A stretch of DNA of 63,398 bases, filler included, from Salisapilia sapeloensis CBS 127946 (taxonomy: Eukaryota > Protista > Oomycota): NCBI GenBank assembly GCA_023334545.1. It is 7 parts of 7 records of this genome, joined end to end, with 100 filler letters (N's around TTAATTAATTAA, not from the genome) between each part and the next. Parts side by side here need not be neighbours in the genome. Positions count along the whole stretch, not along the records: positions 25,630 to 43,457 come from JAADVB010000332.1; 6 more parts are not named here. The stretch is one strand, 5' to 3'. The translations under genes and the position numbers were made by a program. This document shows, one piece after another, positions 26,027-37,602 of this stretch. Under the pieces are notes generated by a model. That model was given only the letters and a program-made list of their open reading frames with translations, ran no database searches and was not told the DNA's origin. The first letter of the stretch is position 1; the number at the start of each line of letters is the position of its first letter.

Positions 26027-28536
26027 ATGGCCGCTGCCTCCGTCTTGTTAGCATGCCTTTTAGCATGCAGTCTCCTAGGCATTGACGGAAAGGATAGTAA
26101 TTCCATAGCCACCAAGACACTGCTCATGCAGCCGGATTGTCACGGGAATTGCAAGGGTTATGACGCTTGCGTTATCTACGACATTGACGACGATAATCCG
26201 TGTGATGATGCTGATGACTCGAAAGACAGTGACGACAGTTCACAAAAATCGAGTAAATGCCAGAAGACAGATAAAGACTCGGACTACCAGTACCAATGCT
26301 TTAACATGCTCAAAAAAGGGGGTAAATTTGTTGGTGCCTCCTTTGTCGTTATTTTTGGGAAATCGGCAGACGATGTCGATGACAACAAAGCTCATCTGGA
26401 TGACAAATATCTGGATACTGTCGATCTTCATTTCAATAAGACTGTAACGTCGTGGTAAGACCACATGAAATGTGTCTTGATTTTATTATCTAACTTCATG
26501 AGATAGGATGCTCTGTGGAAACCATTGTTATGTTGACGAACGGAAAGACAAAGCTGCGCAAGTCAAAATTTCTAATGAATCGCTCTCCTTTCCGGAGCGG
26601 GTCGACAAGGTCATGTTTAACAATATCGACTTTTCAGAAGATATGCCATCATTTTACCACTTAAACTCTTCGATAAAAGAGATCGAAATGAAGAATTGTC
26701 GAGTGCATGAAGTACCGGATGTATCGGAAATGGAAGATTTGGAAACATTGTGAGTTCACCCTTAGACATGAACTAGTGACATATTATCTCTTACCTAACT
26801 AACACGTGATTGATAGGACATTAAGCGGCAACTACATTAAAAAGTATCCTGCCAAGATGGCGCTACACAGCCTTAAGAACCTGTACGTATCTTCTTATCG
26901 GATCTCAAAGTCCAGCTGACCGATGCTTTTGATCTATCAACAGTGATTTACATGACAATGAGCTGGAATCTCTTGAAGGCGAATTTACCAACATGCAGTA
27001 CCTGTGGGTTGTTAACTATCGAATGAATTGACAACACGCTAATTTTCTATTTGCAGATATCTAAATAATAATTCCTTAAAGAGGATTCCAGAAACCATTG
27101 CCGACATGCCTATACTCGAGGAACTGTATGCTATCTTATATACTTGGACATAATGACAGAGCCATAACATGAGACGACGTAGATACTTGGGTTACAACAC
27201 ATTTACCGACCTGACGGTGTCTCCAGAGCTTTACGAAATTATAAACAGGACAGTTTTCGACCACAGGAGTGAAGAAATTCAGACAGATATGCTCGATTGT
27301 CCTGATGGAGAGATTCACAACGTTGGATTTACTTCTCTACAGGTTTGCGTCAGTGAGAAAGCTGGCGTAAGTCAAGATGGTAGCAATAGCTCATCATCAT
27401 CATCATCATCTTCCGAAACTACTGAAGCTACTGAAGTTACTGCAGAGGGCGGTATGTCCTCATCGACTGTCGTCTACATCGCGGTTCCCATCGTCGTCGT
27501 GATTTTCATCACTGCCGCCTTACTCTTCTTTTACTTAAAGCGACGAAAGCGAGCCAAATCACTGGACACACGTTCGTGGGGCTATGCTGATGCCAGCTCA
27601 CCGACACTAGCGGCAACGGAAGAGCGGAAGGTGGAAGGCGATAACTCGATTTGGAGCGACCAGCAGCTGATCAACTTCCAGCTAAACGTCCACGACATCC
27701 AAGACATCCGGAAGATTGGTGGAGGTGCTTTTGGTGTCGTGTATTTGGTCCAGTACCATAGCAAGTTCTACGCTTCCAAGCGGATGCGTGAAGAAAGGAA
27801 AGATGCAAACGATATTCAAAGATTCATTTCAGAAATTAAACTCGTGGCGGCACTCGAGCATCCGAATGTCGTGAAACTTGTTGGAGCTGCATGGACCAAG
27901 CGATCTGACTTCCAGGCGCTCTTTGAGTACATGGAGAACGGAGACTTGCGAAGCTACCTTCAAGGCTCTTCCTCTAATCGAGAATGGAGTGATGAAAAGC
28001 TTCACATTGCAAATGACATCATCCAGGCACTCGTGTATGTCCATTCTTTCTCTCCACCGTTGCTTCATCGAGACCTCAAGTCTCTCAACGTCTTGTTGGA
28101 TGAATCTTTTGTGGCCAAGTTGAGTGACTTTGGGACAGCCCGAAAGCATGAGTTGAACACGATGACGGTTGATGGTGTGGGAACAGTGCGATGGATGGCT
28201 CCAGAGATTCTTAGAGGAGAAGGACACTACACGCAGGCTTGCGATATATACTCGTTTGGAGTAATACTGACGGAGCTGTCGACGCATATGCTTCCGTACT
28301 ACGATCTTGTTCGAGATGACAAACGCGAAGGAAGTATGTTGTCTCTTGCAACTCGGGTTTCCACAGGCAGTGTTCGTCCGTCGTTATCAGGGTCGTGTCC
28401 GACTTCGATCCGGTCATTAGCTGAAAGGTGTCTCTCGAGTAACCCCGATGATCGTCCAACTGCTGCACAGATCCAGTACTACTTTCAGAAAATGTTGAAG
28501 ATTGGGTCTTCTAGTGGTAGCATGTCGTTTGAATGA
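26027..28536 (+). CDS. Oomycete LRR receptor-like kinase (TKL group), multi-exon
   Basis: Signal peptide, Cys-rich N-domain, short LRR exons (LSGNYIKKYP, DLHDNELESL, YLNNNSLKRIP), TM segment and kinase with GGGAFG, ASK, HRDLKSLN, DFG and GTVRWMAPE intact. Confidence 0.92.
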
Positions 28537-32976: not shown

Positions 32977-33849
32977 ATGGGCTTATCATCAGAGCAGCTC
33001 GCTTCGTTCGAGGAAGACGGCTACCTCCATATTAAAGGAGCCCTCTCCCCTGAAACTTGCGACAAACTCCGGGAGAAAGCAGCCCACTACGTTGCGCAAT
33101 GTGACCCAAAGGAGCACACGTCGGTGTTCACAACGGACGATCAAACGCGAAAGATGAATGACGAATACTTTCTTTCTTCTGGCGACAATATCTCCTACTT
33201 TTTCGAAGAACATGCTTTTGATGAGAAGAATGTGTTGCAAGTGCCATTGAACCAGGCGATCAATAAGATTGGTCACAACCTTCATAACCTGGATCCGGAT
33301 TTCAAAGACGTGAGCTACTCGGATAGCGTCAAGGACATTGTCAAGTCTCTTGGGTACAGGAAACCCATGGCAGTGCAATCCATGTACATCTTTAAGCAAC
33401 CTCGTATCGGCGGAAAGGTTAGTCCGCACCAAGACGGCACGTTTCTATACACCCGTCCGCAATCCGTGGTAGGTCTTTGGTGGGCATTAGAGGACTGTAC
33501 ACCAGAAAATGGCTGCCTGTACGGTGTCCCAGGGTCGCACAAGGGACCAGTGAAGCAACATTTCCGACGCACGACGGAAGAAGAGCAGAAGGAATCTGGG
33601 CAATTACTTCTGAAAGAGCCTGAAAACGTTGAATTGGACATTGAAGGAAGCAAACCGATTTTAACCAAAAAAGGAGACTTGGTGTTATTGCACAGCTCTT
33701 TGGTTCACTACAGTAATGCCAATACGTCAGATCACTCGCGTCATGCCTACTCGATCCATGTCGTTGAAAGTGATCAAGTCGAGTATCCAAGGGAGAATTG
33801 GCTACAGACGTCGGATGGAAGTGACTTTAAGCAGCTTTATGACGAGTAG
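32977..33849 (+). CDS. PHYHD1: Phytanoyl-CoA dioxygenase domain-containing protein (Fe/2-oxoglutarate dioxygenase)
   Basis: INKIGHNLH, QSMYIFKQPRIGGKVSPHQDGTFLYT, NGCL...PGSH, H...H.S..N.S..SR.AY motifs; HxD...H facial triad intact. Confidence 0.93.
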   Translation: MGLSSEQLASFEEDGYLHIKGALSPETCDKLREKAAHYVAQCDPKEHTSVFTTDDQTRKMNDEYFLSSGDNISYFFEEHAFDEKNVLQVPLNQAINKIGHNLHNLDPDFKDVSYSDSVKDIVKSLGYRKPMAVQSMYIFKQPRIGGKVSPHQDGTFLYTRPQSVVGLWWALEDCTPENGCLYGVPGSHKGPVKQHFRRTTEEEQKESGQLLLKEPENVELDIEGSKPILTKKGDLVLLHSSLVHYSNANTSDHSRHAYSIHVVESDQVEYPRENWLQTSDGSDFKQLYDE

Positions 33850-34019
33850 CTCGACTAAGCATGTACAATGCTGTTGGTAGCAAAACGCTTGAAAAGTAGT
33901 TTTGTCGTTTCCATGCCCATTGTTCCGTTTTATTGTATTTAAAATATTTGTCTTTAACTTGTAAGGAAATGCTACTTGTTGGTGAGATGATTGACAAAAC
34001 GAGTAACACGATCGGTCAA

Positions 34020-34813
34020 ATGGTGATGGATATGCTTCCAGTGCTCTTCCTGGCTGCATTCCTCATCGTTGTGTACTATGCGTATCGTGTACTATTGCCA
34101 AACCGACTCAGAGTATCTCTGCACGAATATCATGCTTCATACTCTTTTCTTGGTGAAGCAAAAGGTAGTGAACGAGTCCGGGTATTGGTCGTGCTCGGCT
34201 CTGGCGGCCATACTACCGAGATTTTAACACTTATGAAAAAACTGGATACTTCTGTGTACTCTCCGACGCTGTATGTGGTTGCAGCAACAGACAAGACAAG
34301 TGAAGAGAAAGCTAGGAACGAACGCAAGATAGAGTCCAAGGACAGCTTTGTCTACATCCCTCGCAGTCGAGAAGTAATATCTGTCTTATGATCACCTTTA
34401 TCGAGTGTATTCAACAGTATCAATAGGTTGGACAATCGTGGAGCTCCTCTGTGTGGACGACCCTTGTTTCCTTTTGGAGTTGCCTACGATACGTCTACGA
34501 CTACAATCCAGACCTAATTCTATGCAATGGGCCAGGTACAGTCCCCATTCCAAATACTCGCTACAAGCGCATATTAAATCACCGTGCAACGTTAGGTACA
34601 TGTGTCCCCATCTGCTTCTCCATCTTGCTTTTCCGATTGCTTCGGTTACCACAAGGCGACTGTCGCATCATCTTTAGCGAAAGTTTTGCTAGGGTCCGAA
34701 CGTTGTCGCTTTCTGGCAAGATACTATACTATTTCGCCGATGAGTTTCTCATCCACTGGCAACAACTCCAACAAGCATACCCTCGCACGAGGTATCTTGG
34801 TGTGATCTGCTAA
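34020..34813 (+). CDS. ALG14: UDP-N-acetylglucosamine transferase subunit ALG14, 3 exons
   Basis: VLVVLGSGGHTTE, IPRSRE|VGQSW, PDLILCNGPG|TCVP and ESFARV..LSLSGKILY motifs across two GT-AG introns. Confidence 0.93.
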
Positions 34814-35311
34814 TGACGACATGGTCTCGTGGCATGTTCAAATGGTACATTTATGGTACCCTAATCCTGAGTACACTGGTCGAAATCGATCGGACGGCAG
34901 ACATGCTTCATACAAAAATAGAGATTTGTCGTTTTCCTACTCCAATCGCAGCGTTAGTATCTCTCTCTCTTCGACTTGCTGACGGACCTCGTAACAATCG
35001 GACGGCCGGGAAGACAGTTTTCGACGGGAAACCCCAGTATTTGACATCCAAGGTGATGATACAACAACGCTCCTTAGGTGGTGGAAGCCAATCCTCCATG
35101 TCGACACAGACGCTCGTGCAAAATAGAGCGAATGCAGCCGGAGTTGATAGGGTACATCCACCACAAGCAGCCATTCCTTCTATATTCTAGACAAATATGA
35201 TTGCTCGGATGCAATATCGGTGCCATGTACCACTGATGTTGACATCACGAGTCGATCTGTTCCCACCTCTTTATCGATACGATGGCTCATGCAGCATGTT
35301 GCTTCAAATAG

Positions 35312-36381
35312 ATGGTGACCGTGGCAGCGACACAGATGAACGCTAGTAACCAGGAGGACAATATCAAGAAAGCCGAGTCCCTTGTCCGCATCGCATCCTC
35401 TCGTGGTGCTCAAATTATCGTTCTGCAGGTACACTATCCGTACATCTAGATGGAAGTAGTCGATTCATGTCTTCTGTAGGAGTTATTCCAATTTTCCTAC
35501 TTTCCAGTGGAAGCCAATCCGAACAACTTTCGAATGGCAGATACGTTGGAAGAATCTGCTTTGGTGCAAGGCATGGCATTACTAGCCAAAGAACTTCGTG
35601 TCGTGCTTCTCATCAGTTTCTTCGAGCGACATCTCAATTCGTACTACAATTCATGTGCTGTCATTGATGCCGATGGTTCAGTCCTTGGTGCCGTTCGAAA
35701 GATGCATGTTGGAGGTATCCATTTCTTACGTAACCTCTACCAAATGAGTGGAAACTTAGAATTATATCGACAGATCGATTGGGGTACAACGAAAGCTACT
35801 ACTTTACACCATCCAATCACCCTTTCCAAGTCTGGAATACCGTATGGAATCTACTTTTTATTATAAATGAACACAAGCTAAGATGGGTGTAGCGATATGG
35901 TCGACTTGGTGTCGCCGTCGGATCCGACCAATGGTTCCCGGAAGTTGCTCGAGGTCTTGTGCTCAAGGGAGCAGAGATGCTAGTCTTCCCAAGTGCCTTA
36001 GGCTCCAACCTAAACGATCCATCGGTGGATTCTCGAGACCAATGGCAGCGTGCGATGCAAGGTCATGCTGCATCTAACATGGTGCCAGTCGTTGCGTCCA
36101 ATCGTGTAGGAAGTGAAGTTGTGGACGGTCGTCAAATCACATTCTGTGGTAGCTCCTTCATCGCTGGTCAAACAGGCGAGATGGTATACACTATCCTTCA
36201 TATCCTCTCGGCATGATTTTTAACATGACAGTAGTTGAAAGTCGCGGATCGAGAGTCGGAAGGTGTTTTGGTTGAAAGCTTTGATTTGGATAAACTCCAC
36301 GTCCGTCGTGCATCCAGTGGACTTTTGCGTAATCGACGTCCGGATATGTACCAGTCGATCTTGACACGCGACGGAAATTAG
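35312..36381 (+). CDS. N-carbamoylputrescine amidase-like (nitrilase superfamily) protein, 5 exons, catalytic Cys replaced by Gly
   Basis: Spliced product has LQ|ELF (Glu), RKMH (Lys), GVAVGSDQWFPE (canonical GVAICWDQWFPE), MQGHAASNMVPVVASNRVG and RNRRPDMY; an upstream exon cannot be excluded. Confidence 0.85.
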
Positions 36382-36417: not shown

Positions 36418-37602
36418 CTATTCGTTTTGAAAGCTACTTTGAACGAGCGAAGCTATTTCTAAGCAATCCTGTAGCGTGAGTCTCGTTTCGTCATGGATTT
36501 GGAGATCTCTGATTAAGGTGTTAAAGTCGTCCGTATCAATATCGCTCACGTTCGCATCGGCATAGAGCTGGTGGAGTGATCTACCGAAAATATAGTCTTC
36601 GTCATCTAAATTGCGATCACCTTGAATCGTTTCAGCTTTTTCAATAAATGCAGTGATAATCGACGAGATGGTTGAGTCATCAAGAGGTAGCTCGGAAGAT
36701 GAAGAGGAGGACCGATTGAATCGAATACGAGCGATGCTTTCACGTATAACGTGCTCAGGATCTTGGAGTTCAAGCTAGTACGGAAGCAAGATTAGGTAGG
36801 TCGCAACGTATCCTGAAGGTGTACGTACGAATGGTAAGGAAGACGCTTCAATTTCTGCTGGTAGGTCAGAAGACAATGCTTTGTATGGAGAATCATCCGT
36901 GATAGATGCGTAGCTTCCACAGTAAGGCGTGTCATTGGCCCATTCGCCTTCATATAATTTGTTTGTTGAGGCGTAAAAGTGCCGACCTGGTCCCTCCTTT
37001 TTGTCTTCTGACCAGTAGCCTTCATACACGTCTCCATTTGCTATCTCCAGACGCTTACTCAATGGTAGATTAGTCGAAAGTAGTAGTCACATACCCATAC
37101 GATAGACACCAAAGCCGGATCGTTCATTTGACTCCCAATCTCCATCGTATACACTGTCGTCTTCATAGAACATTTTTCCTTTACCCTGCTTTTTTCCTCG
37201 CCTCCATTCTCCGTAATATTTCCGACCAATGCCTTCATAGCTTTCCCCCAGGCCGTCTCGCTTCCCAAGTTGCCACTCGCCGCAATATTCTTTACGCAGC
37301 TTCGGCTTTTTACCTTTACCGACTGGTATGTACAACGTTCCTTCACCGTCTCTCCTATCCTCTTTCCAATAACCTTCATATTTGCTACCATCCGAGTACT
37401 CATACACTCCGTAGCCATGTTTCATTCCATCAACCCAATGGCCAGTGTACTTCCCCGTTACAGTGTAAGATTTAGACTGTTTAGTTACTTGATTGGAACT
37501 GTCTGGGTCTGGATCTCCCTTGCGTACCCAATAGACCGACTTGCGTGGACCATTTCGAGCAGCTAGTCGGTCACGAAGTTGGCTTGGTGTTAGCGTATCC
37601 AT
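36418..37602 (-). CDS. MORN-repeat protein (MORN3-like), 3 exons
   Basis: Multiple YxGxWxxGxxxGxG repeats; introns at approx. 37033-37084 and 36777-36830; last exon starts LELQDPEHVI, as in MORN3-type proteins. Confidence 0.85.

What the first reader, a model, noticed from the sequence alone, without database searches (positions are those of the whole stretch)
35312..36381. N-carbamoylputrescine amidase homolog lacking the catalytic cysteine (pseudo-amidase)
The nitrilase-family triad is Glu-Lys-Cys. Glu (LQELF) and Lys (RKMH) are kept, but ICWDQWFPE reads VGSDQWFPE (Gly codon 35920-35922, followed by Ser instead of Trp), and QEKFYF reads NESYYF. All four introns are canonical and the C-terminal oligomerisation motif (RNRRPDMY) is intact, so it does not look decayed. 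It could be a non-catalytic subunit or metabolite sensor in polyamine synthesis. Precedent for dead paralogs regulating this pathway: trypanosomatid AdoMetDC prozyme. A Ser-based chemistry is a less likely alternative.
Basis: partly seen in the sequence, partly recalled or inferred. Interest (0 to 1): 0.72.

Follow-up and report, generated by a model that had tools for sequence, protein, structure and literature searches.

The report
Cysteine-less carbamoylputrescine amidase homolog, oomycete-wide
This intact five-exon gene encodes a relative of the putrescine-making enzyme N-carbamoylputrescine amidase that has glycine where the essential catalytic cysteine should be; every sampled oomycete shares this change under strong purifying selection, so the protein has kept a function that is almost certainly not the annotated one.

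Summary
Window 35312-36381 (+) is a five-exon, 285-codon gene with four GT..AG introns of 51-59 nt. Exon 4 aligns end to end with Medicago CPA (PDB 5H8I), and GGA (35920-35922) sits on the nucleophile Cys158, followed by Ser in place of Trp159. This is neither an error nor a private decay. All 18 full-length orthologs compared, from Peronosporales, Pythiales, Albugo and Saprolegniales, carry Gly at this position, followed by Ser (16), Ala (1) or Thr (1). dN/dS is 0.03-0.10 for the pairs that are not saturated.

Glu48, Lys121, Glu132, Gln161 and Trp162 are kept. The diamine anchor Glu187 is Asn or Ser, and Gly127-Pro128 has become Arg-Leu. Orthologs score below NCBIfam's cut-off for the aguB equivalog.

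My best reading is a conserved, non-hydrolytic protein derived from CPA, with a pocket retuned away from N-carbamoylputrescine. A prozyme-like partner role is not supported, because no canonical oomycete CPA surfaced. Ser-based chemistry is weakened by the Ala in Pythium insidiosum.

The window's copy also has seven substitutions at sites that are invariant in all the other sequences, which hints at relaxed constraint in this lineage.

The parts
35312..35428 (+). Exon 1 (39 codons, MVTVAATQM...IIVLQ). The ATG at 35312 is the likely start. An in-frame TAG lies at 35309-35311.
   Evidence: CN_hydrolase profile positions 1-39; 63-82% identity to oomycete orthologs.
35429..35479 (+). Intron 1, 51 nt, GT..AG, with an in-frame stop. 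It is absent from the Bremia, Peronospora and Albugo orthologs.
   Evidence: the ORF stops at 35449 if unspliced; exon maps of the orthologs.
35480..35714 (+). Exon 2. It holds Glu48 (GAG 35480-35482), Tyr54 and Lys121 (AAG 35699-35701), and ends in phase 1 after Gly (the position of MtCPA Pro125).
   Evidence: aligned to 5H8I chain positions 51-127.
35715..35773 (+). Intron 2, 59 nt, GT..AG. Its position is shared with Bremia and Peronospora.
35774..35841 (+). Exon 3 (D-RLGYNESYYFTPSNHPFQVWNT). Arg-Leu replaces Gly127-Pro128, Glu132 is kept (GAA 35791-35793), and Lys133 is Ser (AGC 35794-35796).
35842..35892 (+). Intron 3, 51 nt, GT..AG. Its position is shared with Bremia, Peronospora and Albugo.
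35893..36183 (+). Exon 4 (97 codons), the core of the domain, with the nucleophile elbow.
35920..35925 (+). GGA TCC = Gly-Ser at the positions of catalytic Cys158 and Trp159.
36007..36009 (+). AAC = Asn at the position of Glu187, the residue that anchors the substrate's distal amine in MtCPA.
   Evidence: residue role from PMC4812014.
36184..36234 (+). Intron 4, 51 nt, GT..AG. Its position is shared with Bremia and Peronospora.
36235..36381 (+). Exon 5 (48 codons plus TAG), the C-terminal arm. Trp277 is Ser (AGT 36316-36318), and RDRRP reads RNRRP.
33933..34813 (+). Upstream Alg14-like gene. Its head-to-tail neighbourhood with the CPA-like gene is conserved in Bremia, Peronospora, Phytophthora kernoviae and Albugo. 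This is context and shows orthology.

Best explanation
The gene encodes a 285-aa protein of the carbon-nitrogen hydrolase fold. It is the ortholog of a clade found in all sampled oomycetes. The clade descends from N-carbamoylputrescine amidase (CPA) but lost the nucleophilic cysteine before the Saprolegniales and the peronosporalean lineages split. Without Cys158 the thioacyl-enzyme intermediate of the nitrilase superfamily cannot form, so the protein is not a CPA by the known mechanism. It is nevertheless a working protein. The fold, the Glu48-Lys121-Glu132 network, the water niche (Gln161, Trp162) and most of the channel wall are held by strong purifying selection. A fixed set of pocket changes has turned the site away from a cationic diamine tail: Cys158Gly, Trp159Ser, Pro125Gly/Ser, Gly127Arg, Pro128Leu and Glu187Asn. 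The most likely mode of action is non-hydrolytic: binding of a small amide or ureido ligand, or a scaffolding role, within a homo-oligomer. It probably does not activate a canonical CPA. What is shown here is the sequence features, the clade-wide conservation, the dN/dS values, the intact fold and the sub-threshold family score. What is inferred is the lack of catalysis, the ligand-binding role and the altered ligand charge preference. In this window's lineage the copy is intact but carries extra substitutions at universally conserved sites, so constraint may be partly relaxed here.
For: Gly sits on Cys158 in the alignment with 5H8I. 115 of the top representative hits have Cys-Trp, while the closest three (P0001 from Bremia, P0002 and P0095) have Gly-Ser. 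Named orthologs from Bremia, Peronospora, Hyaloperonospora, Phytophthora, Pythium, Peronosclerospora, Albugo, Saprolegnia, Achlya and Aphanomyces all have Gly: 18 of 18 in the scripted count, and the two partial models P0158 and P0164 also do by eye. Orthology is supported by the Alg14 neighbour and by shared intron positions. dN/dS is 0.08 for Peronospora effusa vs destructor (dS 0.36), 0.034 for Saprolegnia vs Achlya (dS 0.95), and 0.10 for the Aphanomyces stellatus tandem paralogs. 137 of 283 columns are invariant among the 18 oomycetes. Glu48, Tyr54, Lys121, Tyr130, Asp160, Gln161, Trp162, Ala183 and Asp190 are each 18/18. Arg127, Leu128 and Asn131 are new and also 18/18. Glu187 is Asn in 16 and Ser in 2. 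Residue roles come from the MtCPA structures, where the C158S mutant does not form the adduct (PMC4812014). An AlphaFold model of the Pythium brassicae ortholog has pLDDT 85.8 and pTM 0.87 and matches 5H8I/5H8K at TM 0.90. On TIGR03381 (aguB) the orthologs score 366-375 bits against a cut-off of 410.25, while a bacterial CPA scores 487. A 1,162-nt Logan contig (L009) carries an ortholog as one uninterrupted ORF across all the intron positions, which is consistent with a spliced transcript.
Against: No biochemical data exist for any member. Retention of the full Glu-Lys-Glu set for so long is unusual for a dead enzyme and could mean that chemistry survives. No ligand or partner is known. The presence or absence of ADC, agmatine deiminase or a canonical CPA in this or other oomycete genomes was not established. 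The charge-switch inference (Glu187Asn, Gly127Arg) rests on sequence mapping to MtCPA, not on a modelled pocket.
Confidence: 0.58

Rival explanations
1. The protein is still an enzyme, working either by a cysteine-independent mechanism (water activated by the retained Glu-Lys-Glu set in the space opened by Cys-to-Gly and Trp-to-Ser) or on a different, more labile substrate or reaction.
For: Glu48, Lys121, Glu/Asp132, Gln161 and Trp162 are invariant or nearly so across oomycetes. The new pocket residues Arg127, Leu128, Asn131 and Gly158 are also fixed, which looks like retuning rather than drift. dN/dS of 0.03-0.10 is as low as for a housekeeping enzyme.
Against: To my knowledge, every characterised member of the nitrilase superfamily needs the Cys. 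MtCPA C158S does not form the covalent adduct (PMC4812014). The adjacent Ser cannot be a general substitute nucleophile, since it is Ala in Pythium insidiosum and Thr in one ortholog. No other Cys is invariant in the clade, and the conserved Cys of YFC is also lost, to Pro.
Confidence: 0.16
2. In this particular genome the gene is a relic on its way to becoming a pseudogene: an intact reading frame, but with relaxed constraint.
For: The window copy has 7 substitutions at sites that are invariant in the 18 other oomycete and 8 bacterial sequences: two conservative Leu changes, Pro to Leu in VVLPISFFE, Lys133Ser, Asp to Asn in PSD, Trp277Ser, and Asp to Asn in RDRRP. Other single lineages have 0-2, and the most divergent Aphanomyces paralog, counted over the whole Saprolegniales stem, has at most 6. 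The Ser-rich N-terminal extension of the orthologs is missing, and an in-frame TAG directly precedes the ATG.
Against: All five exons are open, all four introns are GT..AG, and each restores a conserved motif exactly. Identity to orthologs is 63-78%, higher than the 65% of the neighbouring PhyH gene to Bremia. Root-to-tip length (0.47) is in the range of Albugo and Aphanomyces. The lineage is a long unsampled branch, so some excess of changes is expected.
Confidence: 0.12
3. It is a prozyme-like regulatory subunit: a dead paralog that hetero-oligomerises with, and controls, a canonical CPA in polyamine synthesis.
For: CPA enzymes are obligate oligomers with active sites walled by neighbouring subunits, and AtCPA shows cooperativity (PMC4812014). 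The C-terminal swapped arm is conserved in the clade. There is a precedent in the trypanosomatid AdoMetDC prozyme (PMC6221367, listed).
Against: No Cys-bearing oomycete CPA appeared among the named hits, and right after the Cys-less oomycete proteins (at least 69% identity) the list passes to bacterial CPAs at about 59%. Duplicates in Aphanomyces are both Cys-less. There is no second copy and no agmatine deiminase in the 18-kb piece or in eight ortholog loci. The diamine anchor Glu187 is lost.
Confidence: 0.06
4. It is a sequencing or assembly error, or a mis-drawn exon, at the Cys codon.
For: No read-level check was possible.
Against: The same Gly is present in 18 orthologs from independent assemblies. 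The codon lies in the middle of a 291-nt exon that aligns without gaps to 5H8I.
Confidence: 0.01

Closest known systems
Plant N-carbamoylputrescine amidohydrolase (MtCPA, PDB 5H8I-5H8L; Arabidopsis NLP1/CPA)
   Same: The fold is the same: the model of an oomycete ortholog has TM 0.90 and 50% identity to 5H8I. Window exon 4 matches at E 2e-33. Glu48, Lys121, Glu132, Gln161, Trp162, Tyr54, Tyr130, Ala183 and Asp190 are kept, as is the C-terminal arm.
   Different: Cys158 is Gly, Trp159 is Ser, Pro125 is Gly, Gly127-Pro128 is Arg-Leu, and Glu187 is Asn. In this window Lys133 and Trp277 are also Ser. It therefore has no nucleophile and no anchor for the diamine tail.
Bacterial AguB (NCBIfam TIGR03381, N-carbamoylputrescine amidase equivalog)
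   Same: It is the best-scoring family for every exon and for the orthologs, with 51-56% identity.
   Different: Orthologs score 366-375 bits, below the curated 410.25 cut-off, while a genuine bacterial AguB scores 487. There are six fixed differences from the eight bacterial sequences, including the nucleophile.
MtCPA C158S engineered mutant (PDB 5H8K/5H8L)
   Same: It is a CPA scaffold without the thiol that still folds, oligomerises and binds putrescine non-covalently (PMC4812014). This serves as a laboratory model of what a Cys-less CPA can still do.
   Different: It is an artificial single change with Glu187 and Trp159 intact. The oomycete clade has a natural, multi-residue remodelling of the pocket.
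Trypanosomatid AdoMetDC prozyme (dead paralog activating a polyamine enzyme)
   Same: It is a catalytically impaired homolog of a polyamine-pathway enzyme that is kept by selection.
   Different: The prozyme coexists with, and binds, an active paralog. No active CPA partner was found for the oomycete protein, and its substrate anchor is gone.

Membership tests
Carbon-nitrogen hydrolase (nitrilase) superfamily, PF00795 | The alpha-beta-beta-alpha CN_hydrolase domain is detectable by profile and by fold. | tested here: met
   Pfam hits for exons 1, 2 and 4 (E 5e-4, 2e-9, 1e-13). The ortholog model matches 5H8I at TM 0.90.
Carbon-nitrogen hydrolase (nitrilase) superfamily, PF00795 | A Glu-Lys-Cys catalytic triad. 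| tested here: not met
   Glu48 and Lys121 are present. Cys158 is Gly (GGA 35920-35922), as in 18 of 18 oomycete orthologs.
N-carbamoylputrescine amidase (EC 3.5.1.53; TIGR03381 aguB) | A whole-protein score at or above the curated equivalog cut-off of 410.25 bits. | tested here: not met
   Orthologs P0156, P0162 and P0160 (part) score 375, 369 and 366 bits, and bacterial P0173 scores 487. The window was scored exon by exon only (77.9, 138 and 34.3 bits for exons 2, 4 and 5). The joined model was not scored.
N-carbamoylputrescine amidase (EC 3.5.1.53; TIGR03381 aguB) | Glu187 anchoring the distal amine of the substrate, the specificity determinant in MtCPA. | tested here: not met
   It is Asn in the window (36007-36009), and Asn in 16 and Ser in 2 oomycetes, against Glu in 8 of 8 bacteria. 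The residue's role is from PMC4812014.
N-carbamoylputrescine amidase (EC 3.5.1.53; TIGR03381 aguB) | A narrow hydrophobic channel made of Tyr54, Pro125, Tyr130, Trp159, Trp162, Ala183, Ile184 and Trp277*. | tested here: inconclusive
   Tyr54, Tyr130, Trp162 and Ala183 are kept, and Ile184 is Leu. Pro125 is Gly, Trp159 is Ser and, in the window only, Trp277 is Ser. The geometry of the pocket was not modelled.
N-carbamoylputrescine amidase (EC 3.5.1.53; TIGR03381 aguB) | Pathway context: arginine decarboxylase and agmatine deiminase in the same genome. | not testable with these tools
   Only an 18-kb piece is available. There is no PF04371-like sequence in it or in eight ortholog loci. No searchable paper describes the pathway in oomycetes.
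N-carbamoylputrescine amidase (EC 3.5.1.53; TIGR03381 aguB) | Hydrolysis of N-carbamoylputrescine to putrescine, CO2 and NH3. | not testable with these tools
   This needs an enzyme assay.
Prozyme-type pseudoenzyme (dead paralog regulating an active paralog) | An active, Cys-bearing paralog co-occurs in the same genome. | tested here: inconclusive
   None appears among the 120 best hits to the Bremia ortholog; every named oomycete protein there that I aligned (19 of 20) is Cys-less. Both Aphanomyces copies are Cys-less.
Prozyme-type pseudoenzyme (dead paralog regulating an active paralog) | A hetero-oligomer with the active enzyme that changes its activity. | not testable with these tools
   This needs biochemistry.

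The most novel reading that the evidence does not exclude
The oomycete clade is a functional enzyme that performs amide or ureido chemistry on the nitrilase fold without any cysteine, using the conserved Glu-Lys-Glu set and a water molecule in the cavity opened by Cys158Gly and Trp159Ser. This would be the first cysteine-independent catalytic mechanism in the nitrilase superfamily, acting on a substrate whose tail is neutral or acidic rather than a diamine.
Probability: 0.12. Interest if true: 0.85.

Novelty: new variant of a known kind. Interest (0 to 1): 0.6.

Why it matters
Public databases name several members of this clade 'N-carbamoylputrescine amidase' (Phytophthora nicotianae, Achlya, Aphanomyces, Albugo laibachii). 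Metabolic reconstructions of oomycete plant and animal pathogens that use those names would therefore include an agmatine route to putrescine. The evidence here says this step cannot run by the known mechanism in any sampled oomycete.

What exists instead is an old, strongly constrained, cysteine-less descendant of the enzyme. It has a coherent set of pocket substitutions and an unknown role. It offers a clean natural case for asking what a nitrilase-fold protein does once the nucleophile is gone. It is also lineage-specific, which makes it a possible marker or target candidate in oomycetes.

I found no description of it in the searchable literature.

Tried and rejected
- **Identifying the organism.** Exact look-ups of three neighbouring ORFs found nothing in the collection. 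It is an oomycete on a long branch, sister to Peronosporales plus Pythiales.
- **Exon 3 against PDB.** The peptide is too short, and it gave only a chance match to a repeat in a large toxin. This was ignored.
- **First codon mapping.** Gapped tblastn read through the short introns. I replaced it with ungapped mapping.
- **dN/dS for the window.** Synonymous sites are saturated in most inter-order comparisons among the orthologs (pS above 0.75), and the window is at least as distant from every fetched ortholog (63-78% amino-acid identity). No window dN/dS was therefore computed and no branch-specific omega could be obtained.
- **Literature.** Searches for oomycete agmatine deiminase or ADC, and for nitrilase-superfamily pseudoenzymes, gave nothing relevant.
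- **N-terminal exon.** I looked upstream for the exon that orthologs have and found none.
- **RNA genes.** The tRNA and Rfam scans of the piece were empty.
- **Rejected: sequencing error.** The Gly is conserved in the orthologs.
- **Rejected: Ser159 as a general nucleophile.** Variants with Ala and Thr exist at this position.

Full report
**Observation**

Reading the window and translating the exons by reference gives a five-exon gene on the + strand.
- Exons: 35312-35428, 35480-35714, 35774-35841, 35893-36183 and 36235-36381. The stop is TAG at 36379-36381, and the total is 858 nt, or 285 aa.
- Introns: four, of 51, 59, 51 and 51 nt. All are GT..AG, and each restores a conserved motif exactly. 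Left unspliced, intron 1 gives an in-frame stop at 35447-35449.
- Domain: Pfam CN_hydrolase covers exons 1, 2 and 4.

phmmer against PDB aligns exon 4 (97 aa) to Medicago truncatula CPA at E 2e-33. GGA at 35920-35922 falls on the nucleophile Cys158, and TCC falls on Trp159. Exon 2 carries Glu48 and Lys121. Exon 3 keeps Glu132 but has Ser for Lys133. Exon 5 aligns to the C-terminal arm, with Trp277 changed to Ser and RDRRP changed to RNRRP. The one qualification is that the C-terminal motif is not fully canonical.

**Limits on the work**

I did not build or submit a joined protein, so no whole-protein score or fold exists for the window's own product.

**Is it private to this genome?**

It is not.
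- An HMMER search of exon 4 against 1.84 billion representatives found 1,202 relatives. Of those top-150 hits that cover the site, 115 have Cys-Trp. The three closest have Gly-Ser.
- The best hit, P0001, is a Bremia lactucae protein. Its locus has the same Alg14 gene immediately upstream as the window does.
- Searching with P0001 returned named orthologs from Peronospora (three species), Hyaloperonospora, Phytophthora kernoviae and P. nicotianae, Pythium insidiosum, 'Pythium' brassicae, Peronosclerospora, Albugo candida and A. laibachii, Saprolegnia, Achlya and four Aphanomyces species. After these the list passes straight to bacterial CPAs at about 59% identity.
- In the alignment every oomycete sequence has Gly at position 158. 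The next residue is Ser in 16, Ala in Pythium insidiosum and Thr in one Logan ortholog.
- The Alg14 neighbourhood recurs in Peronospora, P. kernoviae and Albugo. Three of the window's four intron positions are shared with Bremia and Peronospora.

The Cys loss therefore predates the split between Saprolegniales and the peronosporalean lineages.

**Selection**

I took codon alignments from the fetched loci and computed dN/dS by the Nei-Gojobori method.

| Pair | dN/dS | dS |
|---|---|---|
| Peronospora effusa vs P. destructor | 0.08 | 0.36 |
| Saprolegnia vs Achlya | 0.034 | 0.95 |
| Aphanomyces stellatus tandem paralogs | 0.10 | 0.89 |

Most deeper pairs are saturated at synonymous sites. Among the 18 oomycete sequences, 137 of 283 columns are invariant. 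An AlphaFold model of the closest named ortholog (pLDDT 85.8, pTM 0.87) superposes on 5H8I/5H8K with TM 0.90. A 1,162-nt Logan contig carries an ortholog as one open frame across all the intron positions, which is consistent with a spliced mRNA, although the run type was not checked. This is a maintained protein and not a pseudogene family.

**What changed and what did not**

I used the residue roles from the MtCPA structures (PMC4812014) and the exon-to-5H8I alignments to tabulate the pocket.
- **Kept in all oomycetes:** Glu48, Tyr54, Lys121, Tyr130, Asp160, Gln161, Trp162, Ala183 and Asp190. Glu132 is Glu or Asp.
- **Changed and then fixed:** Cys158 to Gly; Trp159 to Ser (Ala, Thr); Pro125 to Gly, Ser or Cys; Gly127 to Arg; Pro128 to Leu; residue 131 to Asn; Ile184 to Met or Leu; Glu187 to Asn (Ser in Albugo).

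Glu187 is the residue that hydrogen-bonds the distal amine and sets substrate length and charge in MtCPA. Losing it, together with a new Arg near the entrance, argues that the pocket no longer selects a cationic diamine tail. This last point is inference from sequence. By NCBIfam's own standard the clade fails the aguB equivalog: 366-375 bits against a cut-off of 410.25, while a bacterial CPA scores 487.

**Interpretation**

Without the thiol, the thioacyl intermediate that defines catalysis in this superfamily cannot form. I therefore read the protein as a conserved, non-hydrolytic derivative of CPA, acting through its retained and retuned pocket or through its oligomeric scaffold (confidence about 0.58). 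The rivals are as follows.
- **Cysteine-independent or altered chemistry (about 0.16).** This is suggested by the unusual retention of Glu-Lys-Glu. Against it, the neighbouring Ser is not conserved and no other Cys is invariant.
- **Relaxed constraint in this lineage (about 0.12).** The window copy has seven substitutions at sites invariant in the 18 other oomycete and 8 bacterial sequences. Other single lineages have 0-2. It also lacks the Ser-rich N-terminal extension that the orthologs have, and an in-frame TAG sits just before its ATG. Against this, its frame and splice sites are perfect. Its root-to-tip length resembles that of Albugo and Aphanomyces. It is more conserved than the neighbouring PhyH gene.
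No canonical oomycete CPA surfaced, both Aphanomyces copies are Cys-less, and the polyamine anchor is gone.
- **Sequencing error.** This is effectively excluded.

**Comparison with what is known, and novelty**

The fold and ancestry are those of CPA/AguB, but membership in that enzyme family fails on three tested defining features: the nucleophile, the Glu187 anchor and the equivalog score. The nearest functional analogy is the engineered MtCPA C158S, which folds and binds putrescine but does not form the covalent adduct.

I found no paper that describes a Cys-less oomycete CPA clade or any natural Cys-less nitrilase-superfamily protein with an assigned role. Several members are annotated as 'N-carbamoylputrescine amidase', which is probably wrong as a statement about activity. 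I rate the finding as a new variant of a known kind, with interest 0.6.

Noticed in passing
P0270 (700 aa, Logan) and P0115; seen: A fusion of agmatine deiminase (PF04371) with a CN_hydrolase domain that has Gly-Trp where Cys-Trp should stand. A Cys-less CPA-like domain is thus physically linked to the preceding pathway enzyme, and it arose independently of the oomycete clade.
   Followed up: partly
P0024 (590 aa, Logan) and P0020 (304 aa, JGI); These are two further independent Cys-less CPA-like proteins. P0024 is otherwise canonical (it keeps HIPDGPGYQEK and GSEP) but has Ser-Ser for Cys-Trp and a long low-complexity C-terminal tail. P0020 has lost both Lys121 (to Gln) and Cys158 (to Gly).
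   Followed up: partly
L008 6379-7584 and 8001-9102 (Aphanomyces stellatus); The Cys-less gene is tandemly duplicated. Both copies keep Gly-Ser, with dN/dS 0.10 between them. A. euteiches also has two copies.
   Followed up: partly
P0160 (Albugo candida, L004 6001-7767) and P0164 (Peronospora belbahrii); The public gene models fuse Alg14 and the CN_hydrolase into one protein. Elsewhere the two are separate head-to-tail neighbours about 250-500 bp apart, so these are probably merged annotations, though read-through transcripts were not excluded.
   Followed up: no
window 35284-35311: A nine-codon open frame (MAHAACCFK) ends with TAG directly before the main ATG, in the same frame. Its start resembles the MHAS... 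start of the orthologs' N-terminal extension, which suggests that the extension was lost in this lineage.
   Followed up: partly
window 27169-28536 (+), 32977-33849 (+), 37090-37602 (-): The neighbouring genes are a protein kinase with a possible membrane-spanning N-terminal part, a PhyH-family dioxygenase (65% identical to the Bremia gene near the ortholog), and a MORN-repeat protein. A MORN gene also lies near the ortholog in Saprolegniales.
   Followed up: no
L009 (Logan SRR31412040 contig, 1162 nt): An intron-free copy of an oomycete ortholog (with Gly-Thr at the site), carrying about 190 nt of 5' flank and 50 nt of 3' flank, looks like an assembled transcript. The species and the run type are unknown.
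   Followed up: partly
model m11556e416fb0, residues 123-129 (NEKYYFT loop): The loop that carries the second glutamate (Glu132) is the only internal segment with pLDDT below 50 in the monomer model. It may be ordered only in the oligomer.
   Followed up: no
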